Assembly: GCA_965202585.1 (NCBI GenBank)
Contig: OZ241829.1
Location: 24,986,001-25,050,000 of the forward strand
Length of the DNA stretch: 64,000 bases
DNA from: Thalia democratica
Lineage: Eukaryota
Direction: 5' to 3'
Made by a program: the position numbers and the translations under genes. Shown here piece after piece: positions 37,701 through 61,695 of the stretch. The notes beneath the pieces were generated by a model, which was not told where the DNA came from, searched no databases, and worked only from the letters and a program-made list of their open reading frames with translations. Each line of letters begins with the position of its first letter. Within the stretch, counting starts at the first letter, position 1.

Positions 37701-40700
37701 TCACGCCAGTTTACAAGTATCCCGCATGACACAGAGAATATACGCACGCAAACTCAAAAGTTATTTGTCAACCAAACATCGGCGTTTTGTCACTTTTGTC
37801 CAGATTTCCATTGTCCTTTCTATCCGCCCCTTTCCACATAATGCGGACACTAATTTTTATCGACAATGAATTATTTGTTTTTGTTGTAAATTGAAAACAG
37901 TGTTTGCCGAGCAAATTTTTCCCTTTCACAATAGGTGAGTTTTTTCTTTGGGTTTTTTCGACTTCTGCTCCCGTATTATTTTCAATGTTATTTTCTCCGC
38001 TTTGTAATAAAACACAGTTTTGCCGTTTTTTTGTTCGCAAAGTGAGCGTGAACTTATCGAGCATTTTATCAAGATTTGAGATATGCCAAAGTTAATAGGA
38101 TTAATAAAACTGTTTAAACAGTGAATAGTTTTGTATATGCTTCTACTGGGGCATAGAAATAAATTGCAAGTAATCTTTATCGAACTTACCATCAAAAAAT
38201 GTACTTGAGTACTTTTTAACACAACTAAAACTATTTTAATTTTTATATAGCTTATTCAAACTAAGCCTTTCTAGCTTTTTGCAACAAATTTAAAATAAAA
38301 TTAATTCCAAAAAAACGCTTGTTACCGTTAAATAGACAGTAGTGTTGATAAAATTCAATGTATGTAAATAATTTAACGCTTTAAAATAAAAAAAATTAAA
38401 CAATTCTTAACAGCAATACTTTCCGCCTCCGGACCATTCCGTGTCGACCCCGGACGCCCAACAGCAAATGTCGATACCGCAGGACAGGTGCAACAAGAAC
38501 AAGCTCCACCAGAGAGACCAGAGGTCCAACTCATTCACGCCCCAGTGCGCACCCGATGCCAACAGCCCCACAGGTGAGCGAGGAATTTTTAAATGCTTTT
38601 GTTTAAGACAGTTTCCAGTGCGTGAAAACAATGGGTTAAACATTTCTACTATTGTGCTTCTTCGGTTATCAAATGCACTACTTATTTTATTGTTATCTGA
38701 TTTGTTAGTTATTTTTAAAAGCAATGAAACTTGGTCTAACAAGCTTACAGCGACGGAAAATCAATTCTCATTAAAATTTCAAGTTAAAGTTTCCATAACA
38801 CCGCTTCCTCATTTATTTATTATGGCCCGTGTCCCAAAAACCTCCCCATAAAGTTCCGTCTTTGTTTATTTAGATCTGCCTAGCAACTGCATTGTTGTCA
38901 AGAAGAAGTCATCGTTGCTATGATCCCAGGAGACTGCGACTCGTGGTCATTGTGTATTTGTTCATAAGCAAATATATGTTTATTTCAAGCGTTGTTTTCA
39001 TAACGAAAGCTCACTCTATGGTTTTCTTTATTGTGAACTCAACTGTCGAAGTCTTGCTGTAAACAGTATATTTAGCTTTTTAAAATTGTTTACAAGATTT
39101 TTAAAAGTTTACAGGTTACATAGTTTTATGTTTACAACTTTTTAAATTTAGTTTTCTAAAATCAAACTTTAGTCAACTACTGTTTTCTTAAACTTCAAGC
39201 TACTTTCAGTTTTGGTTTATATATAATCAATTAAAATGCTGATCTGAAATAAAAACTTGCGAAAGTAAAAACAAACAGAAACTTACATCAGGCCTTGTCA
39301 ATTTTTTCTTGAGTTTTGACGAAGCTCGTATAAAATATATCATTTGGCCTACTACGGTGCCAAAAAACGAAATATGACATCATAAAGCACCGAAGCAAAA
39401 GCGGTTTTCTGGCTTTGAACTTTGATTAAAAGTTGTGCTTCCGTTTTGTTTTAAAGTTTGAACTCTGGTGACATTTGAAGCGTTACTTCCTGACATTTTA
39501 TGACAGTACCTACAACATCTTTTTTGATAATTTCCAGCATTAAAACAACACATTAAAATTAAATGCAAAACAAGGCAAGCTCATCTTGTACCTTTTTTAC
39601 AAATAAAGTTGTAAATCTGCTCAACACTCATATAAGTTGCAATTAAATATTCGTCAAAGTTAACAAAGTTTTACGAAGTTTTTCCACTATGCGTTTTTGT
39701 TTTTTGCATAGTTTTGTAAAAACACAAACTTTTGTTTTTAAAAGTATCGTTATTTAAAATGTATCTTTCTGTCAAGTACTTTTAGGAAGTCTTGTTTGAA
39801 AGAACAGACCTTTTTACACAATTTTAAACTTCTCAAACAATTTGTTTCTCCACCAGGGAGCGCATTGGAGGGCAGCACGTACTCCGGAGAGGGAGGAGGC
39901 GAAGAGGAGACGGAGCCGGGAAAGAAGCCGCCGCAGAAAAAAAGGGGGATTTTCCCTAAGCAGGCGACTAATATCATGCGAACGTGGCTATTTCAAAATT
40001 TGACAGTGGGTATAATTAAAATACTTGAGTAATTGAATGTCTGGTTGCTATAATTACTGAAAAATTAAGCCAAATTGATTATTTTATATTCCTATAATAA
40101 AATTAAATCTTAGTTATTTAGATGTACTTTTAGTAAATAGTTATTATTTAGTTTATTAAATTATTATCAATCATAAGATTTTTCAATTGCTAAATTTTAT
40201 TTTTCTATAAAACAATTTTTTTAGTTAAATTTTCTTAAACTCTTAGTTAGAATCAAAAAAACTTTTACAAAGGATTTAGAATCTACGAATACATTTTAAA
40301 AACTAATTTAAAGTTTTAGCTGACGACAGAAACAATTGTTGTTTTTACAGCACCCGTACCCGTCAGAAGAACAAAAGAAGTCGTTGGCAGGACAGACCGG
40401 GTTGACGATATTACAAGTCAACAATTGGTGAGTTGATGTTAACAAAAACTACTCGTGAAGTATAAATTGGTTATAAATCGATCAACCAGTGCAAGTAATG
40501 AAATTTGTGGTGGGCAAAAATAGTAGTCAGAATTCAGTAAACTAGTTTTGCAAAGTCTAAAACCTCAAGAAATTGCAACTTAGATTTGTTTTGAATACAA
40601 TTTTAAAACTAATAGACAGTTAATTTACTTCAACTTACATGAAAGTTTCTCCGTAATAAAACATGTGTAGATATTTTTTTGAATTATCATTTTCGAGTCT

Positions 40701-43700: not shown

Positions 43701-44814
43701 GTTAATAAATAAAAGTTTATTTTCAATATGATATACATTAATTCAAATAGATGTTTTTCAATTTAAACATGCTTGTTTGGTTTTGTTAAACACAGAATGA
43801 TAAAAATATTTTTTTAACACATTGTTAATGTATATTTATAAAGATTAGAGACTTTACAGCTTAACTAGTTTTAAATAGTTTTGATTCTAAGTTATACAAT
43901 TTATAACTTATATTAACAACTCAAATTCTTACAGGTTTATCAATGCTCGGAGGAGAATTGTACAACCGATGATTGATCAATCTAACAGAGCAGGTTCGTG
44001 TTTAAATAATTCGAAAATTGTTTTTTAAAACCTGCATCGTGTAACTTTGTTCAAAAACTTACTTTTTATTTAGTTAAAACTGACAAAATATTGCCAAAGT
44101 ACTTTTTTTCTAAGTTTTAAGAGTTGATGAACATTTAATTATTTTTTCAGCATCCAACTCGATGATGAACCCTTACAGCCCGGACGGTCAGCCGATCGGC
44201 GGGTTTTTTATGGACCAATCAGGTCATCTGCCCATGAGACACCCGGGAGGTTGGCCCGCGGGTAAGAGTTTTTTTTACTTAAAAGCAAAGTAAAGATTCA
44301 TAATAACCTAAATCTATCAATGCGTATCGTAATATAACTATTTATAATTCAAGCGCACTAAAATGTTATTAGCTTAGTTTTTAAACGTCAACTAAATTAG
44401 AAGCTGGTATATATTCAATTAAACTTTTTTTTTATATAGCATAATTAATTACGTACTAAAGTGTTATTAGCTTAGTTTAAAAAATCATTTAATTGGGAGT
44501 TAATACGATTAGAATTGTTGAAAACTAATAAAAAATTCAAACCAGGTTTCAACGGAATGCCGGCCGACATGATGATGGGCAACAACTTCATGGGGAACCC
44601 CCAGAACCACCACTCGCAGCAGGGAATCCCCCACCTGCGACACCCGCCCACCATGCTCCTCCCACACCACCCGTCGCTCATCGGGGGTTTTCCCCCGAAC
44701 CACCACCCTCACGTCCACCCGCACCAGCAGGGCCACGCAACGTCAGTGGCGGGTCACGGAGGGGGAATTCCCGGAGACATCCAGTCCCACATCCACCTGG
44801 GTCCCACGTGCTAG
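4699..44814 (+). CDS. Meis: Meis/homothorax-family TALE homeobox gene, spliced CDS join(4699-4701,19099-19391,28541-28694,29733-29789,32423-32473,32684-32902,38414-38573,39857-40005,40351-40427,43935-43993,44151-44261,44546-44814), 533 aa
   Basis: Exons join in one open frame (1602 nt incl. TAG) through GT-AG junctions. The product has the HM/MEINOX domain ([10 protein letters not shown]...SFNEDIA...[22 protein letters not shown]...KGKMPIDL) and a TALE homeodomain ([61 protein letters not shown]). Intron positions and phases match vertebrate MEIS as I recall them. Exon 1 is less certain than the rest. Confidence 0.96.
10311..10939. promoter_or_regulatory. Candidate enhancer island in intron 1 (X-box cluster plus Meis sites)
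   Basis: GC-richer island with GTTGCTACGACAAC (10866), GTTGTCAAGGCGAC (10926), GCTGCGTGGCAAC (10837), a half-site at 10423, and CTGTCA at 10311, 10406 and 10494. Confidence 0.5.
14002..14045. repeat. Short tandem repeat, three copies of TCGTACTAAGT
   Basis: tcgttcgtactaagt-gca-tcgtactaagt-tcgttcgtactaagt read directly. Confidence 0.9.
19099..19391 (+). CDS. Meis: Meis exon 2 (N-terminal Gly/Pro/Gln-rich region to AHKEAIY)
   Basis: acaaacag|CAATTC acceptor and TACAA|gttggt phase-2 donor. KEAIYK|H matches KDAIYG|H of MEIS. Confidence 0.93.
22569..22914. repeat. Long near-perfect inverted repeat (foldback) in Meis intron 2
   Basis: Left arm 22569-22733 (165 bp) is the reverse complement of right arm 22741-22914, apart from a 9-nt expansion in a TA/poly-T run. 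The spacer is 7 nt (aaaataa). Confidence 0.97.
26863..26876 (-). promoter_or_regulatory. DR2 nuclear-receptor element (RARE consensus)
   Basis: + strand TGAACT-TG-TGAACC, i.e. GGTTCA-CA-AGTTCA on the - strand; both halves fit RGKTCA. Confidence 0.5.
28541..28694 (+). CDS. Meis: Meis exon 3 (HM/MEINOX box A)
   Basis: ttttcaacag|A CAC GAC ... CAA CGG|gtaagt; encodes [22 protein letters not shown]...[15 protein letters not shown]. Confidence 0.97.
29733..29789 (+). CDS. Meis: Meis exon 4 ([19 protein letters not shown])
   Basis: tattctag|ATA ... TTG|gtaagc, phase 0-0. Ends in EIDNL like the vertebrate ELDNL exon. Confidence 0.92.
32423..32473 (+). CDS. Meis: Meis exon 5 ([17 protein letters not shown])
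   Basis: tattcag|ATG ... AAG|gtaatt; 51 nt, near-identical to [21 protein letters not shown]. Confidence 0.97.
32684..32902 (+). CDS. Meis: Meis exon 6 (HM box B end, Gly/Ser linker)
   Basis: cgttcag|GTT CAC GAG CTG TGC ... AAA CAG|gtttgt; encodes [25 protein letters not shown]. Confidence 0.96.
35679..35988. mobile_element. Non-autonomous hAT (Charlie-like) MITE, about 310 bp
   Basis: Termini CAGTGATTCTTAACC and GGTTTTGAACTGCTG (10/15 TIR match). Flanking 8-mers atatatac and atatagac match at 7/8, consistent with a hAT target-site duplication. Internal GGGGTAA repeats. Confidence 0.72.
38414..38573 (+). CDS. Meis: Meis exon 7 (linker)
   Basis: cttaacag|CAA TAC ... ACA G|gtgagc; GC-rich, open, phase 0-1 as in vertebrate exon 7. 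The sequence itself is divergent. Confidence 0.88.
39857..40005 (+). CDS. Meis: Meis exon 8 (homeodomain N-terminal part)
   Basis: ctccaccag|GG AGC ... TTG ACA|gtgggt; encodes [23 protein letters not shown]. Confidence 0.97.
40351..40427 (+). CDS. Meis: Meis exon 9 (TALE loop, helix 2, start of helix 3)
   Basis: tttttacag|CAC CCG TAC CCG ... AAT TG|gtgagt; encodes [26 protein letters not shown]. Confidence 0.98.
43003..43016. promoter_or_regulatory. Perfect palindromic RFX X-box in Meis intron 9
   Basis: GTTGCTATAGCAAC, with TGAGTCA (AP-1) at 42980-42986 and X-box-like ATTCCTATGGTAAC at 43052-43065. Confidence 0.6.
43935..43993 (+). CDS. Meis: Meis exon 10 (helix 3)
   Basis: cttacag|G TTT ATC AAT GCT CGG ... 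GCA G|gttcgt; encodes [19 protein letters not shown]. Confidence 0.98.
44151..44261 (+). CDS. Meis: Meis exon 11
   Basis: ttttttcag|CA TCC ... GCG G|gtaaga; [15 protein letters not shown] resembles MEIS PYNPDGQPMGGFVMD. A second in-phase donor lies at 44250. Confidence 0.93.
44546..44814 (+). CDS. Meis: Meis terminal coding exon (His/Pro/Met-rich C-terminus, MEIS1B/2D-like), stop TAG 44812-44814
   Basis: caaaccag|GT TTC; phase matches exon 11. HLRHPPTM resembles QLRHGPPM of the long vertebrate C-terminus. Confidence 0.9.
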
Positions 44815-50114: not shown

Positions 50115-52289
50115 GTCGACTCTTGGCATAGGGGGCAAAAGATTGGGTTTGTCATTTTTTTAAAAGTTGATCTTTTTTTTATTTTAAAGGTCTTTGACTT
50201 AGCAAGCAATTGGACTTTACAGTTTTTTGAAATTGAATTTTTATTTCAAAATACTGAGGTACAACGTAATGTACTGTTTTACTTATCTTAATAGTAAACT
50301 TTTTTCTGGTAGTGTTAAAAAAATAAAAATAAACTCAAAAAAAATAACGATTTTTTTTTACTTAATGGCTACAAAATTTTTTTGTTTGCGTGTTAGTAAC
50401 TGTATGAACGTTTGAAAAAAAAAATTATTAGTTAAAAAACTACTTACAACAAATCAATTAACTTCAACCACAGAAAATGGACACTAAAAAGAATTAAATA
50501 TTTAGAAAAAGTTCAAAATTATACAAAATTAATAAAATTCAAGTTCATTAACAAAATTGATTATAAAATAAAGAGTGATTGTAACTAACTAAATCAACTA
50601 AATCTCATTCAAATCTAGCAAAAAACTTATTCAGCACCTAATTTACAAAAATTAACTAAGTTCAAATAAAAAACTAACCATATGTTTTGACTAATTTGAT
50701 CAAAAGCTGTAAACATATTGTTTTAATTATAAAAAAGCTAAGTGTTTAGTAATAAATCTGAAAAAACTAGTAAAATTATTAAACATTTTGGAAATAAAGT
50801 TTTACAACAACTGCAAACAAATATTTGTGTAATTTTAAAAGTTTATAAAAAAAGTAAACTATTTAATGCACTAAGCTCAAACTTTTAATACAACTCATTA
50901 AAAAAACACATCATAGTATTTACACCAATGTACTCAGTTCTGTGCGACTTTTTTACGAGTCGATCTTATTTCAAATAACTTTGTGTCCTAGCTAGCAGTT
51001 GCTTTTCACAGGTTTTTAAAATTCAAACTATCAAAAAAAAATTAAGGTACGATGAAAATAAGTTCATAAGGTTCTTTATGTTAAAAATCAAAAAACAAAT
51101 CTTTTGAACAGTCTTTAAACTTCTTTTTCTCGATTCTTTTTCTCACAACAATATATCCATCTATTTTTTATTTTAGGGTTACAAAGTACTGTTGATTATG
51201 TGTTTGTAACTTTATTACTATTAAAAAAAGTTTAAATATTTGATAATTAGTTAAAAAACTGTAGACAACAAGTCAAGAATTTCAAACCACTTTAAACTGA
51301 CAAATAAAATAGTTAAAGAGAGCATGTAGAGCTAAGGTGCCTAAAGTGGGCCATTTCAGAATTTTAGGGGGCCATAGGTTGCAAGGGAGAGGGGGAGGGG
51401 CATATGATTAGTATAGAGACCATGAGGCCATAATTTGGAACTATTATTAGATATTTTTTTATGTAAATAAATAGTATTTAATATTAAATTTCATACTGCA
51501 AAAGTTAAACAATAATTTAAACTACTATTTTTTAAATACATTGCATCTCTTTTAACTTTGTGAAAAAAAAAAAACAATATTTATTTGGTTACATGTTATG
51601 AAACATTATATCACTTTATTTTGAAAATGGACAGACTTATATAGTAATGCTTAAACTTAAACATGAGTAAGATTTTAAATTCAAATGTCTTGAAAATTTT
51701 TCTATCTCTGATAACTAAAACCACTGATTTTGTTGAACATCTCAAAACTCAAAATAAGAAAGCAAAACTTTGCAACCTATGACGCATACAATCGACAATT
51801 CGTTTTAGTATGAAAATTTTAAGATTGTAAATACAAAACTAACTTTAAAAAAAAAACTTGAATGTTTATTTGAATTATAAAAAGTATAATAAACTAAAAA
51901 ATAGTAATCACGAACAAAAAGACTAACTTTATTTTTGTATTTACAAAACTTTTGTTTTATCTTTCAATTGACACTTTTTCAACAAAAATAATTTTTGTAT
52001 TCTGTAAACTTTTCTTACACTACTGCAGTTATAAAGTAAGTTTCGTTACCTTTTTTTTCAAAATGGTAAGCAGCACTTAGAAGGTAACAAAACAAAGTTT
52101 TGTAAAGTTAAGGTGTTTTAAAATTTAAATTTACACTAATAAAAAACAACTCAGTTGGTTCTACCTCTTTATCTAAAAGTTTTGCCAAAAATACTTTATA
52201 GTAAGAAAATACAATTACTAACTTTGTTTCGACTGTTCTTTAAAATTTTCTACATTCAGTATAGATTGTTTTTATTTTCCGTAAACAGG

Positions 52290-53480
52290 CTTTAAATTAA
52301 TTTAGTTTTTTTGTATTTTTTCCAAGTAGTTAACATTTTCTTTAACAAACATCCATTCAACTGTAATATTCGAAGTTTTCAAGCTTAATATTTTTTCTCC
52401 AATTGTTTATTCCAAACAGTCAAAGTTTTTGTCAGAATCATTATCTCTAAATACTATCAGATCAATTTAGAATTTTCATTTATTAGTAATTTACAATCTT
52501 TTAACAATCTATTTTTGTACATTTTTAGTATTTATCGAGAGCAACAAGTTTAGCTTCTCTTTGTCTCCTTTAACTCTCTCACATTTTCAACTTATATAAA
52601 TTTATTTTGGCAGTATATCTAGAATTCACAAAGAACTAAACGTAGTCTATTTCTATTTTAAGTAAGTTTTTTTGTCGTTTATTTTCTTTTTGCTAAATTT
52701 CTGTAAAATTTACTCATTACTTTTTTATTTCAACGTTTTAGTAATTATTACGAGGTAGGAGCTCTATATGTTTTAAATACATTACATATCATTTTAATTT
52801 TGTAATATAATAAAAAAACTACTTTTACATGATTACATATTTAAGTTAAGCAACTTTTAAACAAACATTATATTAATAGTATTATGAAAATTTATAGACA
52901 TTAATAGTATGTTTAACTTAAGCATGAGTATGTATGCTTTTATTTTAAGTTTTTGAATGATTTTCTATCCATGATCACCAAATCCACTAATACAGTTAAA
53001 AATGATAGAAAATTTTAAGAATAATTAACGTAACAAAAAAAGAATAACCATGGTTGCAAAAATCACTTGATTGAGATATAAATAAAAAAACAAATGTTAA
53101 ATTAACCAACTTTTTTTTTTTAAAGTGAGGCTTCATCTTTTGTATACACGTATATATAAGTTTTATTTCTTTATCTTGTATTTTTGACATAATTTAGTTT
53201 TGGAATACAGCACCAAACTAGAAATTTATTCTTTTTCTTTACTTTGTATTTTTTTAAATTAGTTTTAACTCGTATAACTTTGCTTTGTCAGTAAATCCAG
53301 AATTGACAAACAGTCTTTTTAAAACTTTAGTAAGTTATTCTTCTTTTTATTTTTGATAATTTTTTTGTAAAATTCTTTTTACTCATTACTTCTTTATTTT
53401 AAAATTTCAGCATGTAGGAGCCAATAATATATTTTTAATCCCTTTTCTCGTTTTAACATTATGACTTTGTAAAAAACTGA
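52290..53480 (-). pseudogene. Decayed coding sequence containing an internal duplication, family unknown
   Basis: Protein-like frame interrupted by several stops (IDLIVFRDNDSDKNFDCLE*TIGEKILSLKTSNITVEWMFVKENVNYLEK). Two related segments 678 bp apart encode FVNSRYTAKINLYKLK (52585-52632) and FVNSGFTDKAKLYELK (53263-53310). Confidence 0.45.
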
Positions 53481-54889
53481 ATATTTAATAAATATTACCT
53501 AATAAATACAAATTAAATGATAGTTAGATTCGGTTTTTTTGTTGTTTTTGATAGTAGTAAAATTTTAACAAATACAAAATTAAAAAATTATCTCAATCGA
53601 TTTTATGTGTAGTTTATTTACAAACTAATACAATTTAAACAAAAAATAAATAAAAAACATTAAGTCTTTAAATATACGGTTACTCCTTGTAACTTACTAA
53701 GTAAGTTTAAACTTTAAATTGAGTAGTGTAACTAACACTGTCAAGCTTTAAAAAAGTTAAGCACCTAAAAAATTTAATGATGAAATAGTTGATCAATAAA
53801 ATTTTAAAAGGTGATGAAACATCACCTAAAACTTAAATTAACTTCTGTGATAGACTTGCACACTCAGCATGCTGACAAATTGTATTACAGCTTGATGACT
53901 CAGAAAACTTGTGCTAGTGTCTTGAAACTTATAAACTAGTTTTATAAAATTTTTGATGCTAACTTACATTTTAGTATTTTCATGTAAGTATAACAGGACT
54001 ATTTTAAGCTATTATAATTTTTTCAAATGTTTTTAAATGTAATAATCGTATGGTCAACCATCTTTACTATAGTTTTCTGCAAAAGTTTAAAATAATTTTC
54101 TGTCGTAGGTGACCTTCTCTGTTATTTTTTATTTTGCTCTCACACTTTTATTAAGTTATTTAAAATGTTGGTGAACCTGTATAAATATAAAACAACAGAA
54201 ATAGAGATGTGTGATTCAATAGAATGTACAAGGCTAGATTAAAACTCGCGTTGTACAAGCCTAAAATATATTTGTTTTGTTTAAAATGTATTACAATTAA
54301 TATTCAAACTACTATGTATAAAGCAAATACTTACTTTTTTTATCTTTTCCAAATCTTTATCTCGAAATGGTAAAGACTTTATTCTTAATCTTTTACATCG
54401 TTTTGAAGGTTTTTTTGGTTCAACTACCAATTATTTTAAACAAAACAATTTATAAAGAAAAGTAACTTACTCTAACTGCTTCAGGTTACGTCATAAATAG
54501 TTTATTTTATATTTTTTTTTTTATAAAATTAAATAATGTTTGTAATGTTGTGCAATTTTTCTGAATTTACACAATTTGAACTAAAGTACTAATTTTTGTA
54601 ATAAAATTTATTATATTTGATAAAACTGCATTAACTAATTCATGTTTCGGCAGGTATTTGGTGATCGCGGGCCTAATTTAAAAAATAAAGTCTTCGCTGG
54701 CGGCAGTTATAGATAAGGTGACCTTTTTTCTAGTCTACAAATGACTCATTTTAATATAATACAATGAAACATGATAAATAAATAAATTTAAACTTAGGTT
54801 GCAATGTATATTTTTTCTTTGCAGTTTAGCTTTGGTGTACTCATTTTGATTACCTTAAAGATCACTGATATGTAGCATACCTTCTAAGT

Positions 54890-55172
54890 CAATGGTTTTC
54901 AACCTTTTTTAAAAGTGTGCACACTTAATTACTAGAAAATAATCATGTGCACACCAGAGTAAAAAGAGTACAAGTAATTAATAAAAACTGCTATTATATT
55001 TTATGTTTTAAATGTAAATTTTTAAGAACAACCTATTAAGAACTCAAACTTGTGTTGTAATTAGCTTTTTGTAAAACAAAAAAAAACAAAAAAGTTTAAC
55101 ATATTATTTTTTACTTAAGAAAATTTTCTGTGTGCACTAAAATAATTTTTATGAACACAGTGAAAACCACTG
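54890..55172. mobile_element. hAT (Charlie-like) MITE, about 283 bp
   Basis: Termini CAATGGTTTTCAAC and GTGAAAACCACTG are near reverse complements of the CAGTGGTT type. The 8-bp flanks match at only 4/8. Confidence 0.55.
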
Positions 55173-56286
55173 ATATAAACTAAAGATAAAATTATTATTA
55201 TTGTGAAAATTTTTATTTAAAAAGTATCAAATCCTTACAAAAAATATTGCAAGATCAATGATATTGCACTATTTCTTAATAACAATTAATTCAACAAATT
55301 TCTTCACTGGTTTCCTTTTCTTTGTTATTTTGCAGAAGTTTTTATATCTTAATAATAGTTTACCAATCATGTTCACTGGTCGTAGTTTGCCGACTCCTGT
55401 TTAGAATACATCTAATAGTTATTTATTTGTCTAAAAGACATTTACTAAATAACTAAAAAAATATTATTTTTGAGGTCCAGAAAACAAATATTTTCGTAAC
55501 AAACGTATAGACCTTCTGGACTCAGTTCAAAAAGCATTAAATCGGAAGAATAAAATACTAAAAAAGCTCATTAAGAATTAAATATTTTTAATGATTGAGA
55601 TAACTGGTTTGAAGACTTAATTTAAACAAAAATTAATTAGAGTAAATTTTGACATGTTTTCAAGAAAATTTTATAGTAACTAAGAGTCATGTTTCATATA
55701 CATATGATTACAAAAGAAAATATTTTCGCTTAAAAATTTTTCTTTTCTTTTGACTTAAACTTTGAAACTTTAGCTTTTTACCTATTTAGTAAACTTTAGC
55801 GGTTTGGTTTTAGTACATACAATTGAAGTCTTATTAATATACAGATAAGTTGGTAGTTGTAAAACAATAATAAATCTCAACTCTGTTTATTATTTAACAG
55901 AACTATTTATTAACACTTAATTAAAGATATTAGCCAAAAAGGCATTTTAATTTGGTTGAGAATCATTGTTTTATAACATGTAACCTTTTTTTTTAGAATG
56001 TAACTCTGAAGTACAATAACAAGGCTATATTACTATTCTAAATTTAGGCTATCAACATAAACAATTCATATCTGTACTGCATGCTTTTTTGTTTTGAACG
56101 GCAATTAGAAAACAGTTCATAAATATTACTAATAGAAACTTTATCAGCAAACTAATTATTACAACAACATTAAGTACGTTTACCGTTCTATACACAAAAA
56201 GGAAAATAATAAGTCAATGGATTAACATCAGTTTTGAAACTACTCTTTTATTAGTGCAACTTCATTAAATTAACTGAATATTGGCA

Positions 56287-56610
56287 TTATCCGCTTTTCA
56301 ATTTAACTGCTATGTTCATAACAAAATTGTATTGCAGGTAAAAATTATTACGAACAAATTCTTGGATCGGTACATTTGTATCTCCGATCTCAAGCAAGCC
56401 TCCGTCGGCGTTGAAAATAAAAGGACCCTGAATATTCAGCTGTGTATAATCATGGTCCGAGTACGGCTCCTTCACATCATTGAAGTACTGCTGCATCTTT
56501 CTCCGATCCCTTTCTATCGGTTCCGGTTTCGTTGTGAACGTGTTGGTGACAGTTTTCCCACTGGGGTCTATTGAGGTCATTGTTAAAGTGGTTGTAAATG
56601 TAATTGACAT
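56287..56610 (-). CDS. Small orphan protein-coding ORF (107 aa as one exon; may splice out at 56356)
   Basis: GC-richer than its flanks. ATG is preceded by an in-frame stop. A TTCCGTTTTAG acceptor lies 18 nt upstream of the ATG, and AATAAA (56247-52) lies about 35 nt after the stop. I recognise no family. Confidence 0.5.
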   Translation of the reverse strand: MSITFTTTLTMTSIDPSGKTVTNTFTTKPEPIERDRRKMQQYFNDVKEPYSDHDYTQLNIQGPFIFNADGGLLEIGDTNVPIQEFVRNNFYLQYNFVMNIAVKLKSG

Positions 56611-57644
56611 TTAGTTAGGTTTGTATGACTAAAACGGAATAAACATTCAAAAAAATTATTCAACGAGTTATTGTATGTTTATTGCGTACTCTTAATTTAC
56701 TTTCTTCTTTATTTACTCCATAGAACTTTGTTTATTCGCAAATTGATTTAATTAAATTGAAAACTTTGTTTACGAGTAGTTTAATTCACAGAAACTTATT
56801 TGAGTTTAACAACCAAGTCTAAAGAAAAACTTTTTAAAAACTAAATTATAATAAAACTATAACTTTTATTCTTCAAATTTCCACTACACTAAGTGATGTG
56901 GTTACTAAGATATAATCTTTAAACACTTAAGCATTTAAATTAAAAGTATAAAATAAATTTTTTAAGTTACTGAAATTTAAATTTTCAATTTGTACATAAA
57001 TTAATCCAGCACTAATAGACTAATTTGTTTATACTATTAAAAACTTTTGAAGAATAATTATTTTCATAGTTTTATTACTTAATCCCTTATATGTTTATTA
57101 AATCAAACTTTAAGTTTTAAAATGCTAAACTAGCCTATCATATAATACACTAGTAATATCTTGAAAGATAAATTTTATAATGAGGTCATAAGTACTTATA
57201 TAATTTTACAATACCTAATTTCTGATCAAAAGTTGTGTAAAAAGTTGACCTTGATTGAAAAAAACAATTAAAAATAATCTAAACGACCAAAGAAGTTTTG
57301 CAACTAGAGACTTTTTATAGCAAAGACTTTTTCGTTTAAACACAAAGCCTGTAAAGTTATTTTTTTAATCGTGAAATAATGACACAAATAAATTTTTTGA
57401 ATCAACTTTTAAGTTTGACCATAACATTGTTAAGTTTTTATAATAAAGTGCTTTTATTTAGATCATAAACTGAAAATAATTTTTTTGTCAAACATTAGTT
57501 TACATTGCTAACTTTTAATTTGTTAAATTTAAGAAAGCACACTATTAGTAAAGTATTATTTTTACTACTGTAAAATTTCAACTCTTAAAAAGTCGGTATA
57601 CCTATCAAAATCAGTGAAAAAAAAAGTTGTTATATCTTTTATAG

Positions 57645-58127
57645 GGGAACGGGTCAAACATGCACGAAGACTATTTTGCACGAAGGGCCATTTTTGCACA
57701 AGATAATTTTGCACGAGGGGTCACTTTTGCGCGAAGACACTTTCACTCGAAGAGTCATTTTTGCAAAAGAGTGAAAAATTAATGAAATATAAATAAAATA
57801 AAATTAAAATAAGAAATTTAATAAAAAGAATTTAAAAAGATAAACTAGTACTAAAAATGTCGATTAAGCGTCAGAGGTAACATTAATAGTAATAATAGTA
57901 AGTTAATATATAGAAAGTAAAAGAAGAAGAAAACCGACTAAGGGTAAGGATTAGGGGTAAAACTGATAATTTAAAAAAACAAAAACAATAATCAATAATG
58001 AAAAAAAAAAAATAATAACCCGTGCAAAAGTGTCTGCGTTTAAATGTGAACCTTAGTTGAAAATTCTTTCGTATAAAAGTGACCCCTCGTGCAAAAGTGT
58101 CCCCTCGCGTATATCTGACACCTACCC
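57645..58127. mobile_element. Non-autonomous DNA transposon (MITE) with subterminal tandem repeats
   Basis: GGG...CCC termini with 17/25 TIR identity. ACTTTTGCACGA-type repeats of about 17-18 bp run in opposite orientations at the two ends around an AT-rich core. No clear TSD, superfamily unassigned. Confidence 0.7.
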
Positions 58128-58174
58128 TTTTCATAAACATACACGAATGATCAGTTTTCAAATATTTCTACTAG

Positions 58175-61100
58175 ATCATGCAGCTGAAGGTGCAAAATGT
58201 GAAAATTGTCTCACCAGCAACGGGCTTACAGGGAATGACTGCATCGAAAGTGTGCTCTGAAAAAATTCGGCCAGTAAAACATACCAGTAAATTGTGTGAA
58301 AATATTTCTGCGATTTCGTTTGGCTTGTCATATAATACATTTTATGCTTTGCTAAACTTGTTTTCATTCATAAAATGCTTTGCTAAACTTGTTTTCATTC
58401 ATAAAATGTTGATGTTAGAAAAAAAGTTACCTCACATGTACACGTTTCATTAGTTTTATAAATAAAGTTGTAATTGAGTATATTTAACCGAAAAGTTTTT
58501 GCGTTCATCAGCTACTACGACCAATTATTATTACGTTTTTTTTGTCGTTCAATAAACTAGTATTTTGTACACATAAGGACGGTATTTTACTTTAAAAGAA
58601 AAAACACTAAAATATAACATTTAGTCTTAAAAGATCAACTAAAAACAAAATTTAAACAAAATCAGTAGTTTTACAAATAAAAAAGCTTAAATGCTTGACT
58701 AAAAGTATCATTTTCTAGAAAAAAGTAGTATATATATTAGACAAAACTAAACTGCTAAATATTTAACTTATTAAACTTCTTTTATCGTTTTAAAAATCTT
58801 TACTAAACTTTATATAAAGTTTTTCGAGATTATCCGTAAATTTAGTAACTAAATTAAATATACAGTTTTAACTAATTCATATTAAATATTGCTTTATATA
58901 GGTGTTGGTAAATAAAGAGGTTGATGCAGAATCATTCGCAATGAAGAGAGCAAAAGAAGCAACTGATGATAGAAAATAAAGGTACTATTTTTACCATTTG
59001 AGCAAATAAACAGTTTCAATTTAGAGTTTAAACAAAAATAAATTATATGCTTTTTGTAGCTCATAATTAAAACTATAAAAAATTGAGGTTGAAATATATG
59101 TCGATGATTTAAAGCTAAACTTTCAAGTTAATTTTTCTTGTGTCGAAAAACCAATTGCTCAAAAAACGGTAAACATCATATATGCTTTTGAACAGCAAAG
59201 TGTTAGACATACTTGAGGACTCAAAATTTTATCAAGAGGACAACAAAGTTTTACAGGATTTACAAAGTTCACTTTGCAAGATCTGCAGAAGTGTCCGAGC
59301 ATCTTGTGCGAACAAGACACCCTCCACCGTTAACTATATCTGTTAGAGAAGAAACTATATACAGTTTAAAGGTTTAAGTTGTTTAAAACATTATAAATTA
59401 AAAAAGTATAAATTTTACATTTTTTAATTCGACTTTTTTCCAAGAACAAAATTTTCAAAAAATCAATTCTAGCTTTTAAAAAGCTACTACACTTACGTAA
59501 AAAATAGTTTCAAGTCTTTTTTTTTTTTTTGTAAATACTTAAAAATATTTTTACCTTAAATTTTCTTCTACATAATCTAAAACTTTTTATTTTTGTTGAA
59601 CTTATCGATATATAAACAACCAAAAGTTTTTTAATTTTTTTACTACATGATAAAAACTTATAAAAAATTATTAGGTAGGTTCTGTATAAACTTTGAGCAA
59701 GTTTTTTGATTGAAACTACTTTCCATCAAAAGCTTAAAAACGAGATTTTGAAAACTGGGCTGAGAATAAACCAAGTTAATAACTGGTTTAAAATCAGTGA
59801 GAATGGCAACAAATAAAGAAAAAGAAAAGTATATCTGTTATTTGTTTTTGTTTTCATATAAATATTATGAGGCCGATTTTTTTATATTAACACTTATTTA
59901 GTAAATATTGCTCATTTTACTTAACTAAAATTAATTTTAATTGTTAATTTTAAAAGTTCTATTTTATGACCTTAAGCTAAACTAGTTATTTGAGATATTA
60001 TAAACAGATTTAATTATCTTTAAGATGTCATGGCAGGAATGTTAGTTGCTGATATTTAGTCGTCGAATCTGTACAGAATTTTAGGTAGTAATTTATAACT
60101 TGAATATTGATAAGCTTTTATTCAATAACAGTACAATATACCAACTTACATTTTTTAAAATTGAGTAAGAATCAATAGTTTATAAATCGTGAATGTTAAA
60201 ATTAACCACATCTGTAACGATATAAGTGTAGCTAAGTAGTTTCAAAAAGTATCGTTAGTATGTAGTAAAGCATTCTATAAACTTTTTATTGTTTTTACAT
60301 TTAGTTTGACTACAATCTTTCAATTTTTAATATCTTTTAATAGTAATAAATTGTTGTGATATAATTTACACTAGCTAAATGCTACTACATATTTTTTTAA
60401 ACTGCTTGTGAAAACGTTTTTGTATCAAACTCAGACAAGATTGTAAATTTTTGAAAAAATTGTTAAGTTTAGTATATAAATGTTAGTCATTTTAAAACAA
60501 CTTTTGCACTATTGTGGGGCTTATACATTTAGTAATATAGAAATAAGTGAAAGCACTGATTGTTGAACATTTCTTAAGATGAAAGCATTGAGTAAAGGAA
60601 ATTTAGCAAATGTGTATTTTAAACAAATTGTGTGTTTGTATAAATTAAACATCCGGTCATTTAACTAGTTTCATTTGATATTTTAAAACACTGAAATTTA
60701 CCGTGGTTTAGTGAGTTACAATGTATTTGATTTATAGTGGCCTCAATTTTTTTAAAATTTCAAGTGAGTATTGTTGTGTATTTTCAAGGTTTTTTTTTTG
60801 TTTGATTCTCTAAATGTGAATAAATTAATAAACTAACAGATTTTAGAAAGTGCTTGAATGTTACTAGTTTTAATTATTGAAAACTTTTCTTTAAGTAATT
60901 GGAACTTGACTATTTATTTTAACAGTTTAGGCTTATATAACGATAATTTGATTCCAGAACATCAACTCCTGAAAAAGTAACGAAAGTTTGGAAACAAAAA
61001 TAGTATAAAGCCAATTTATTTTGCTGAAAATTACTTAAATTCAATTAATTAACTAATTATCTAATCAACTAATTACTCATTTAAAACTATATAAAGTGTT

Positions 61101-61695
61101 TGTCCTCTGTAATTTGCTAGTTTGTTTACTTGTGATCATCACTTTAGCGTGAAACAATTGTAAAGTAATAAACTCGATATAACTTTTGTCTTAATTGTAA
61201 AAAGGCTACTTAAGTGTGAAGCTCTCTAGAAATTTATTGTTTAAATCTCAAAATAGTACAAAACCATGCTTAATACAACAAAAAAACTTCTATAAACATT
61301 ATTCCAATTTAAGGCAATTAGTTATAATACCATTTTCAATAAAGATAAATTAGTGCAACCCTAATCTAAGATACTTGTCTAAATCAATATAACTCAGTAA
61401 ATCTTAAGAACCTATTTAAATAAAAAGGTGTAGATTAGTTTATCATTGTGTTTTTATTTTTCATGTGTAGCTTTTAATTTACATGTTACAGCCAGCTAAG
61501 TAGAATATATCCAAATGTGCTGAAAGTTTATTCTTTATATGCAAACCCCTTTAAGATTTGTTTTAAAAGATAAATAAATTCAAATATTTGTATATTAAAC
61601 ATAATTTTGTTTTTATTGTACAGTCAAAGAAAGGCTCTTAAAGTGAGGAAAATCGTGAAACTAATGCAGCAAAAAATTGAAGTTCTTAGTCAACG
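58175..61695 (+). pseudogene. Multi-exon relic of a divergent non-TALE, K50 homeobox gene (candidate exons 58175-58273, 58902-58981, 59196-59371, 59679-59828, 61624-61695)
   Basis: AG/GT-bounded segments with mutually compatible phases (0,2,0,2). Uncorrected frame KTGLRINQVNNWFK at 59751-59792. ETIYSLK|VLYKL gives the canonical Y8/L13/L16 spacing. A nonsense codon at 58977 and several small indels are present. Confidence 0.62.
58344..58408. repeat. Exact 31-bp tandem duplication
   Basis: atgctttgctaaacttgttttcattcataaa twice, followed by atg. Confidence 0.95.

What the first reader, a model, noticed from the sequence alone, without database searches (positions are those of the whole stretch)
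58175..61695. Hidden, decaying K50 homeobox gene 13 kb downstream of Meis, missed by the ORF track
Seen: TGLRINQVNNWF (59754-89) matches the Meis [12 protein letters not shown] at 10/12 residues, mostly through different synonymous codons, and without the Meis intron. The preceding exon ends ETIYSLK and joins VLYKL in phase 0. Allowing a few 1-3 nt indels, mostly in homopolymers, reconstructs SVREETIYSLKVLYKLEQVFDENYFPSKxLKNEILxKTGLRINQVNNWFKNQR. That is a 60-aa non-TALE homeodomain with K50 and an unusual intron after codon 11. Flanking exon phases chain correctly. Known: K50 domains (Otx, Pitx, Gsc, Six) bind TAATCC-type sites. Inference: a lineage-specific homeobox family of unknown class, recently pseudogenised here or mis-assembled. 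The reconstruction is mine and is not unique.
Basis: partly seen in the sequence, partly recalled or inferred. Interest (0 to 1): 0.78.

Follow-up and report, generated by a model that had tools for sequence, protein, structure and literature searches.

The report
Dead SIX-class homeobox gene relic
The stretch holds the decayed remains of two exons of a SIX (sine oculis) type homeobox gene, a dead early offshoot of a family that has grown to at least 40-50 copies in this marine animal's genome; the relic is an ordinary pseudogene, and the family it reveals is the more interesting part.

Summary
The core observation holds. TGLRINQVNNWF-K sits at 59754-59792, and an upstream open frame ends ...REETIYSLK at 59371 before a GT.

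It is not a homeobox of unknown class. It is a pseudogene of the SIX/SINE class. This genome has at least 79 SIX-domain exon matches in tandem clusters, and their genes share one intron after homeodomain codon 9 (...EExxYxxK|GT), exactly where the relic's exon ends.

- **Exon B (59194-59371):** a frameshift-tolerant scan with one subfamily's profile aligns it over all 71 columns, score 53 against a next-best of 35 in the window. It carries one 5-nt deletion.
- **Helix 3 (59751-59797):** ranks second in the window, behind only the real Meis exon.
- **Helices 1-2:** not above background.
unsupported.

Decay is old, not recent: about 8 disabling lesions, mostly outside homopolymers, and a terminal branch of 1.4 against a median of 0.04.

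A truncated inverted copy lies 109 kb upstream.

The scan had noted other homeobox expansions in this genome, but not this SIX one.

The parts
59194..59371 (+). Relic of family 'exon B': the C-terminal half of the SIX domain plus homeodomain residues 1-9 (R-E-E-T-I-Y-S-L-K). The acceptor AG at 59195-96 sits at the family's position. A 5-nt deletion and frameshift lies near 59260. The GT donor is at 59372-73.
   Evidence: The frameshift-aware profile alignment covers columns 1-71 of 71 with score 53.0. The window background has median 19.5, sd 3.6 and a next-best of 35.1. With lenient penalties the score is 69.5, against 44.9 for the best hit outside this exon. HMMER on the read-through with X at the break gives E=7e-4 among 5,066 window pieces. 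Splice positions were compared.
59372..59674 (+). Intron between exon B and exon C, 303 nt here against 167-181 nt in intact family members. Those places were left out of every later search.
59675..59750 (+). Decayed 5' part of exon C (homeodomain helices 1-2). It is read in one frame as VGSV*TLSKFFD*NYFPSKA*KRD, with stops at 59687, 59711 and 59735, then a 5-nt deletion before 59751. It is co-linear with family DNA but is not statistically distinguishable from background.
   Evidence: DNA alignment with six family members, codon listing, half-profile scans at rank 35 to 450 of 854
59751..59801 (+). Helix-3 relic: K-TGLRINQVNNWF-K(50). One A is then missing from an A-run (59790-93). Past it the restored frame reads N-Q and a TGA stop where the family has N-x-R.
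   Evidence: Family exon-C profile score 44.4 (55.9 with lenient penalties). Apart from the real Meis exon and the bin next to it, the window background reaches at most 30-35. HMMER E=6e-4. PF05920 17.3 bits, below the cut-off of 24. Comparison with the paralog.
57232..59750 (.). A 2.5-kb segment present here but absent from the inverted paralog at C5:24936863/5. It holds exon B and the first half of exon C, so the paralog lost it by deletion. The junction shows the microhomology TCAAAA/TGAAAA.
51616..60600 (.). One arm of an inverted segmental duplication of about 9 kb. The partner is C5:24943814-24935987, about 109 kb upstream on the minus strand, at 70-87% identity. The partner keeps only KTGLRINQVNNWFKKHIKRQ*.
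58178..58260 (+). It has no similarity to any family exon above background.
58899..58978 (+). It lies about 220 nt before exon B, where the family's small exon (TDKELAEEALKD...) would be expected. The similarity is not above background (score 17.6, rank 130 of 428). Inconclusive.
61607..61693 (+). It does not match the family's second homeobox or its conserved C-terminal exon.

Best explanation
This is a non-functional relic (unprocessed pseudogene) of a SIX/sine-oculis-class homeobox gene. Two of its exons are still recognisable. One encoded the C-terminal half of the SIX domain and the first nine homeodomain residues. The other encoded the rest of a K50 homeodomain. The gene belonged to a large expansion of SIX-type genes in this genome, apparently lineage-specific. 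In an exon-B tree it branches beside, and before the radiation of, one subfamily on C4:75.4-75.5 Mb. After it stopped being maintained it accumulated stops, two 5-nt deletions and a 1-nt deletion. The locus was also copied in inverted orientation 109 kb away, and that copy later lost exon B and half of exon C in a 2.5-kb deletion. Shown: the homology, the exon structure, the lesions and the duplication. Inferred: the lack of function, the order of events and the age.
For: - **A large SIX family exists here.** The genome has at least 79 PF16878 (SIX1_SD) exon matches and at least 49 exon-B matches in tandem clusters.
- **Family members are true SIX-class genes.** In member L039, exon B scores 43.3 bits on SIX1_SD and exon C scores 51.6 bits on Homeodomain.
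- **The intron position is shared.** Family genes have an intron after homeodomain codon 9 (...K|GT), as the relic does.
- **The relic's exon B matches.** It aligns full-length to the subfamily profile, score 53 against a next-best of 35, about 9 sd above the median. HMMER gives E=7e-4.
- **Helix 3 matches.** It is second in the window, behind only Meis.
- **The layout fits.** The two hits are in the right order, on the same strand, 303 nt apart.
- **Class markers fit.** Position 50 is K and homeodomain positions 3-6 read ETIY.
- **It is broken.** Lesions are listed.
- **It is old.** The relic is sister to the subfamily (support 93/84) on a branch of 1.4 against a median of 0.04.
- **The family itself is alive.** Intact relatives show dN/dS of 0.22-0.59, so the relic is the exception.
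Against: - Pfam's SIX1_SD model does not hit the relic's own open frames directly. The link is transitive, through the genome's own family.
- The helix 1-2 part and any exon for the N-terminal half of the SIX domain are not detectable.
- The tree placement rests on about 60 degenerate residues on a very long branch.
- No reads or RNA could be examined, so neither assembly errors nor transcription are excluded directly.
Confidence: 0.85

Rival explanations
1. It is a live, very divergent homeobox gene, and its apparent breaks are assembly errors in an AT-rich genome full of homopolymers.
For: An independent sample (run X3) holds 86% of the stretch's 31-mers, which shows presence but not base-level accuracy.
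Against: Three in-frame stops arise from substitutions, and two deletions are 5 nt long and outside homopolymers. Invariant family residues are replaced: TIWDG has become TISVR. The paralog, an independently assembled locus, also lacks N51 and R53 (WFKKHIKRQ). The branch length is 35 times the family median.
Confidence: 0.04
2. It is a fragment copied from the neighbouring Meis (TALE) homeobox exon.
For: The best PDB and Pfam matches of the 39-aa open frame are Meis1/2 and Homeobox_KN (E=0.3 and E=0.004). It matches the window's Meis helix 3 at 9 of 11 residues.
Against: - Only 24 of 36 nt are identical, with 5 synonymous differences.
- Position 50 is K, not I.
- The Meis intron in the W codon is absent.
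- The length from the acceptor to T38 is 79 nt, against 84 nt in the SIX family. A TALE loop would need 93 nt.
- The exon upstream is SIX-domain-like and ends at the SIX family's intron position, not at Meis codon 25/26.
Confidence: 0.03
3. The coding function is dead, but the DNA is kept as a non-coding RNA or a regulatory element in the Meis neighbourhood.
For: It lies 13-14 kb from Meis. The helix-3 stretch is 40 of 42 nt identical between the two copies.
Against: Windows that well conserved are common across the duplicated block: 22% of 42-nt windows reach 40 or more matches and 10% reach 41 or more. No run recorded as RNA holds the stretch. The paralog lost 2.5 kb of it.
Confidence: 0.05
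4. It is a chance resemblance in AT-rich DNA.
For: Each piece alone is short and below Pfam's cut-offs. The middle of the homeodomain is not above background.
Against: Two independent profiles put their best non-Meis hits 303 nt apart, in order, on one strand. The exon-B alignment starts at an AG and ends at a GT at the family's own splice positions.
Confidence: 0.02

Closest known systems
SIX/sine oculis (SINE class) homeobox genes, nearest SIX4/5 and SIX1/2 types
   Same: A SIX domain lies directly upstream of a K50 homeodomain. Homeodomain positions 3-6 read ETIY (Six1/2 has ETSY; Six4/5's ETVY is from my own knowledge). Helix 3 is TGL...QV.NWFKN. The family's exon-B profile finds 849 SIX-type proteins in the public library, and one of the best hits is named 'homeobox protein SIX4' by its source.
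   Different: The copy is dead. Only the C-terminal half of the SIX domain is traceable. The sequence is far from any bilaterian SIX family, and Pfam's SIX1_SD model does not hit the relic directly.
The ctenophore-specific SINE-class diversification in Mnemiopsis leidyi (18 genes; PMC2959044)
   Same: It is a lineage-specific multiplication of SIX-domain plus K50-homeodomain genes that do not fall into the three bilaterian families.
   Different: This genome has at least 40-50 loci, arranged in tight tandem clusters. Some carry a second homeobox and a conserved C-terminal exon. Other agents' unchecked notes call the organism a pelagic tunicate, not a ctenophore.
Birth-and-death tandem homeobox arrays with pseudogenes (mammalian Rhox, Obox, Dux and PRD-like; human homeobox pseudogenes, PMC2211742 listed, not read here)
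   Same: Intact paralogs are under purifying selection (dN/dS 0.22-0.59) alongside decayed copies. Spread is by segmental duplication.
   Different: The class is different (SINE). This relic is isolated on another chromosome region, next to Meis, rather than inside one of the arrays.
Meis / TALE homeobox
   Same: Helix 3 is nearly identical at the protein level.
   Different: There is no 3-residue loop extension by length. Position 50 is K, not I. There is no intron at codon 51. The upstream exon is SIX-type.

Membership tests
SIX/SINE-class homeobox | SIX domain (PF16878) immediately N-terminal to the homeodomain | tested here: met
   This is met transitively for the C-terminal half. The relic 59194-59371 aligns full-length to the exon-B profile of a subfamily. 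That subfamily's exon B scores 43.3 bits on PF16878 positions 62-113. A direct Pfam scan of the relic's open frames gave no SIX1_SD hit.
SIX/SINE-class homeobox | N-terminal half of the SIX domain | tested here: not met
   No relic of exon A, or of the subfamily's small upstream exons, is above background in 57232-59190 or elsewhere in the window. This could reflect decay or loss. The nearest subfamily also lacks a clear N-terminal half.
SIX/SINE-class homeobox | Lysine at homeodomain position 50 | tested here: met
   W-F-K at 59784-59792, also in the paralog
SIX/SINE-class homeobox | Diagnostic residues at homeodomain positions 3-6 (ETSY, ETVY or QKTH types) | tested here: met
   E-T-I-Y at 59351-59362. 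The ETSY definition of positions 3-6 is quoted from PMC2959044.
SIX/SINE-class homeobox | Family-typical intron after homeodomain codon 9 in this genome | tested here: met
   ...SLK|GT at 59371/2. The position is the same in the C6, C4 and C7 copies, including canonical-looking SIX genes.
SIX/SINE-class homeobox | Invariant DNA-contact residues N51 and R53, and an open reading frame | tested here: not met
   The window has a 1-nt deletion after K50 and then TGA. The paralog reads K51 and I53. Exon C has three stops and there are two 5-nt deletions. It is therefore a pseudogene, not a working member.
TALE / Meis | Three-residue extension between helices 1 and 2; I50; intron in codon 51 | tested here: not met
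   The length from the acceptor to T38 is 79 nt, against 84 nt in the SIX family and 93 nt for a TALE loop. Position 50 is K. There is no intron in the W codon.
PRD-class K50 (Otx/Pitx/Gsc) | K50 homeodomain without a SIX domain | tested here: not met
   The exon upstream is SIX-domain-like and ends at the SIX family's intron position.

The most novel reading that the evidence does not exclude
The relic is the fossil of an early, extinct branch of an undescribed radiation of SIX-class homeobox genes in this marine animal. The radiation has at least 40-50 loci in tandem arrays, against 3-6 in most bilaterians (my own knowledge) and 18 in Mnemiopsis. It includes a subfamily that joins a half SIX domain to two homeodomains and a conserved C-terminal exon with no Pfam match. 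That would make it the largest known SINE-class expansion and a new domain architecture. The copies themselves are observed directly. What is uncertain is whether this is unpublished, and whether the copies are expressed genes.
Probability: 0.45. Interest if true: 0.55.

Novelty: new member of a known kind. Interest (0 to 1): 0.3.

Why it matters
The relic on its own matters little. It is one more dead homeobox copy, and it should not be annotated as a new homeobox class or as a K50 regulator next to Meis.

Its value is as a pointer. Classifying it exposed a very large tandem expansion of SIX-class genes in this genome. The copies are partly intact and under purifying selection, and some carry two homeodomains. 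The relic's deep branch and its inverted, later truncated duplicate show that birth and death in this family have gone on for a long time and have scattered copies outside the arrays.

A census of this family with expression data would show how a normally small, conserved developmental gene class can radiate.

Tried and rejected
- **Reads and RNA.** The look-up of sequencing runs found no run recorded as RNA that holds the stretch.
- **Searches with the relic's own frames.** Searching the genome with the relic's open frames found only itself and the paralog. The solved-structure search found nothing for exon B and only non-significant Meis/PBX matches for helix 3.
- **Fetching more family loci.** A protein search of the own genome supplied them instead.
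The best 'hits' (WHYPLF at 56282 and a hit at 58759-58849) are chance. The second-homeobox profile was never scanned, because no sequences were collected for it.
- **Selection on helix 3.** The near-identity of the two copies there is not unusual for the duplicated block.
- **Other searches.** The ESM Atlas feature search of a family exon gave no usable hit.
- **The neighbourhood.** Other ORFs of the duplicated block have no Pfam family.
Full report
**What is in the sequence.**
- The window is AT-rich animal DNA (24-34% GC in 2-kb windows) from a chromosome-sized contig of an 802-Mb assembly.
- The motif T-G-L-R-I-N-Q-V-N-N-W-F is at 59754-59789 and is followed by K. It sits in a 39-codon open frame, 59697-59813.
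- An open frame upstream ends ...S-V-R-E-E-T-I-Y-S-L-K at 59371, with GT next.
- The window's Meis homeobox exon reads ...[11 protein letters not shown] at 40396-40428, and its W codon is split by an intron.
- The relic shares 9 of those 11 residues. Only 24 of 36 nt are identical, and 5 of the 9 shared residues use other synonymous codons.
- The last Meis open frame ends at 44814.

**First tests.**
- The 39-aa frame scores 17.3 bits on Pfam Homeobox_KN (E=0.004, cut-off 24). The other open frames score nothing.
- Against solved structures, the best matches are Meis1/2 and PBX at E of about 0.3.
- Searching the animal's own genome with the 39-aa frame, or with its DNA, finds one other place: C5:24936784-24936880 on the minus strand. 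It reads ...KTGLRINQVNNWFKKHIKRQ-stop.

**A segmental duplication.**
- Comparing the window with the 80 kb upstream shows that window 51616-57231 plus 59751-60600 matches C5:24943814-24935987 in inverted orientation, at 70-87% identity.
- Window 57232-59750 has no counterpart there. In the paralog the two flanks abut, with the microhomology TCAAAA/TGAAAA at the junction.
- The missing 2.5 kb holds exon B and the first half of exon C of one gene structure (see below). The contiguous state is therefore ancestral, and the paralog suffered a deletion.
- The near-identity of the helix-3 stretch between the copies (40 of 42 columns) is not special. 22% of 42-nt windows in the duplicated block do as well, and 10% reach 41 or more.

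**Class assignment.**
- The residues before the intron (E-E-T-x-Y-x-x-K) and the K after W-F recalled SIX proteins, so I searched the genome with Pfam SIX1_SD (PF16878).
They fall in tandem clusters on C6 (37.45-37.69 Mb), C4 (32.5-33.8, 67.36-67.41, 70.46-70.74 and 75.43-75.52 Mb), C5 (65.03-65.11 Mb), C331, C223 and elsewhere.
- The genes have three core exons:
  - Exon A holds SIX-domain positions of about 3-59.
  - Exon B holds positions of about 55-113 plus homeodomain residues 1-9, ending ...W-D-G-E-E-x-x-Y-x-x-K followed by GT.
  - Exon C holds the rest of a K50 homeodomain.
- Canonical-looking SIX genes of this genome (C7:43.02 Mb, C6:31.29 Mb) have the same intron.
In standard homeodomain numbering it lies after codon 9. 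Positions 3-6 are the diagnostic E-T-S-Y type positions (PMC2959044).

**Statistics.**
- I built position-specific profiles of the family exons. I scanned the whole window, both strands, with a local alignment that allows frameshifts and stops everywhere, so the background enjoys the same freedom as the candidate.
- Places 59500-59537 were masked throughout.
- General family profile, exon B: the top hit is 59371(+) with score 38.5, against a next-best of 35.8.
- General family profile, exon C: the top hit is the Meis exon (60.7), then 59792(+) at 44.4. Apart from the bin next to the Meis exon (32.7), the rest are at or below 30.4.
- One subfamily (C4:75.4-75.5 Mb, C331, C4:32-34 Mb; loci) fits better.
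  - Its exon-B profile aligns 59194-59371 over all 71 columns with score 53.0. The background has median 19.5, sd 3.6 and a next-best of 35.1.
  - There is one frameshift, a 5-nt deletion near 59260. There is also an in-frame gap in a region of exon B whose length varies in the family.
  - With lenient penalties the scores are 69.5 for exon B, against 44.9 for the best hit outside that exon. They are 55.9 for exon C, against 35.4 for the best hit outside the Meis locus.
- HMMER on the exon-B read-through with X at the break gives E=7e-4 among 5,066 pieces of the window. The exon-C piece gives E=6e-4.
- The alignment starts at an AG (59195-96) that occupies the same place in the serine codon as in the family. 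It ends at the family's GT.
- The subfamily itself is SIX class. Exon B of member L039 scores 43.3 bits on SIX1_SD positions 62-113, and its exon C scores 51.6 bits on Homeodomain.

**What is not supported.**
- The 5' half of exon C (helices 1-2) is not above background with either profile (rank 35 to 450 of 854 bins).
- DNA alignment with six family members is co-linear from an acceptor at 59674|59675.
  - It reads that half in a single frame (V-G-S-V-stop-T-L-S-K-F-F-D-stop-N-Y-F-P-S-K-A-stop-K-R-D), with a 5-nt deletion just before 59751.
- The length from the acceptor to T38 is 79 nt, against 84 nt in the family. That fits a 60-residue domain, not a TALE domain.
A conservative read-through with X at each break scores 14.7 and 23.1 bits, and the purely in-frame reading scores 16.4 bits on PF05920 only. 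The high score therefore partly reflects the choices made in building the reconstruction.
- The one at 58899-58978 lies where the subfamily's small second exon would be expected, about 220 nt before exon B. Its similarity is at background level.

**State and age.**
- Lesions in exon B: a 5-nt deletion near 59260, and the invariant T-I-W-D-G-E-E replaced by T-I-S-V-R-E-E.
- Lesions in exon C:
  - stops at 59687, 59711 and 59735;
  - a 5-nt deletion before 59751;
  - one A missing after K50;
  - in the frame that this missing A would restore, N-Q is followed by a TGA stop where the family has N-x-R.
- The paralog keeps the frame there but reads K51 and I53, so it too lacks the universal N51 and R53.
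- In a maximum-likelihood tree of 32 distinct exon-B peptides plus the relic, the relic is sister to the whole subfamily (support 93/84). Identical rows and short matches were left out of the tree.
- The relic's terminal branch is 1.4 changes per site, against a median of 0.04. Its placement is therefore uncertain, but its long neutral history is clear.
- Intact subfamily members give dN/dS of 0.22-0.59 over exons B and C for the deeper pairs. The family is alive and this copy is not.
- 'Recently pseudogenised' is not supported. 'Mis-assembled' is unlikely because most lesions are not homopolymer slips, but I could not look at reads.

**Limits.**
- The look-up of sequencing runs listed three runs that hold most of the stretch (two organism labels), small shares in marine metagenomes, and no run recorded as RNA.
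I worked beside those places from then on.
Other agents' unchecked notes on this genome call it 'probably a pelagic tunicate' and describe other expanded homeobox families (Islet, PRD-like, double-homeobox). None mentions SIX genes.

**Comparison with what is known.**
- The exon-B profile finds 849 proteins at E<=0.001 among 1.84 billion representatives. These are ordinary SIX proteins of many animals.
- The best hit is a mite protein with three matched stretches. Another is named 'homeobox protein SIX4' by its source.
- Only that mite protein reaches E<=1e-30, so no close relative of the expanded subfamilies is evident in that library.
- The nearest published parallel I found is the ctenophore-specific diversification of 18 SINE-class genes in Mnemiopsis (PMC2959044).
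- My literature searches found no report of a SIX expansion of this size.

**Verdict.**
- The finding is real but ordinary in kind: a long-dead SIX-class pseudogene, with a truncated inverted duplicate.
- It is not a new class and not a recent loss.
- The context it revealed, a very large tandem SIX-class radiation that includes copies with two homeodomains, deserves its own follow-up.

Noticed in passing
Own genome: C6:37.45-37.69 Mb, C4:32.5-33.8, 67.36-67.41, 70.46-70.74 and 75.43-75.52 Mb, C5:65.03-65.11 Mb, C331, C223 (loci L015-L066): There is a massive tandem expansion of SIX-domain homeobox genes. Many copies have open exons, and dN/dS is 0.22-0.59 between the deeper pairs.
   Followed up: partly
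L039:1495-2699 (C4:75.455 Mb) and its relatives L037, L038, L041, L052: Some members of one subfamily carry a half SIX domain (43 bits), a homeodomain (51.6 bits) and then a second homeodomain exon (53.2 bits). Other members (L042-L047, L050, L051, L053) have a conserved C-terminal exon ending ...LANDPNVAGMSPVNEYHHYLSIWHYPYFYK, with no Pfam family. This may overlap the 'multicopy double-homeobox gene' noted by another agent (s1-281684). I did not check that.
   Followed up: partly
window 51616-60600 and C5:24935987-24943814: An inverted segmental duplication of about 9 kb (70-87% identity) lies 109 kb apart. The upstream copy has a 2.5-kb deletion flanked by the microhomology TCAAAA/TGAAAA. 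The ORFs tested in the block, including 56287-56610 on the minus strand, have no Pfam family.
   Followed up: partly
C5:24978484 minus strand (about 7.5 kb before the window start; locus L012): A 15-residue match (KNLSINYSFQQKYYK) to the start of the subfamily's exon B scores 40.3, against a next-best of 34.4 in that 80-kb scan. Nearby, 76 nt are 80% identical to window 58485-58557. This may be a second fragment of the same dead gene or chance.
   Followed up: no
   Followed up: no
window 40396-40430: The Meis homeobox intron splits the W48 codon (TG|GTGAGT). This is the position reported for Meis genes from ctenophores to bilaterians (PMC2959044).
   Followed up: no
P0001 (439 aa, a mite protein in NCBI): The best public hit of the exon-B profile has three SIX-domain-like stretches in one predicted protein. 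It is probably a merged model of tandem SIX genes in another animal.
   Followed up: no
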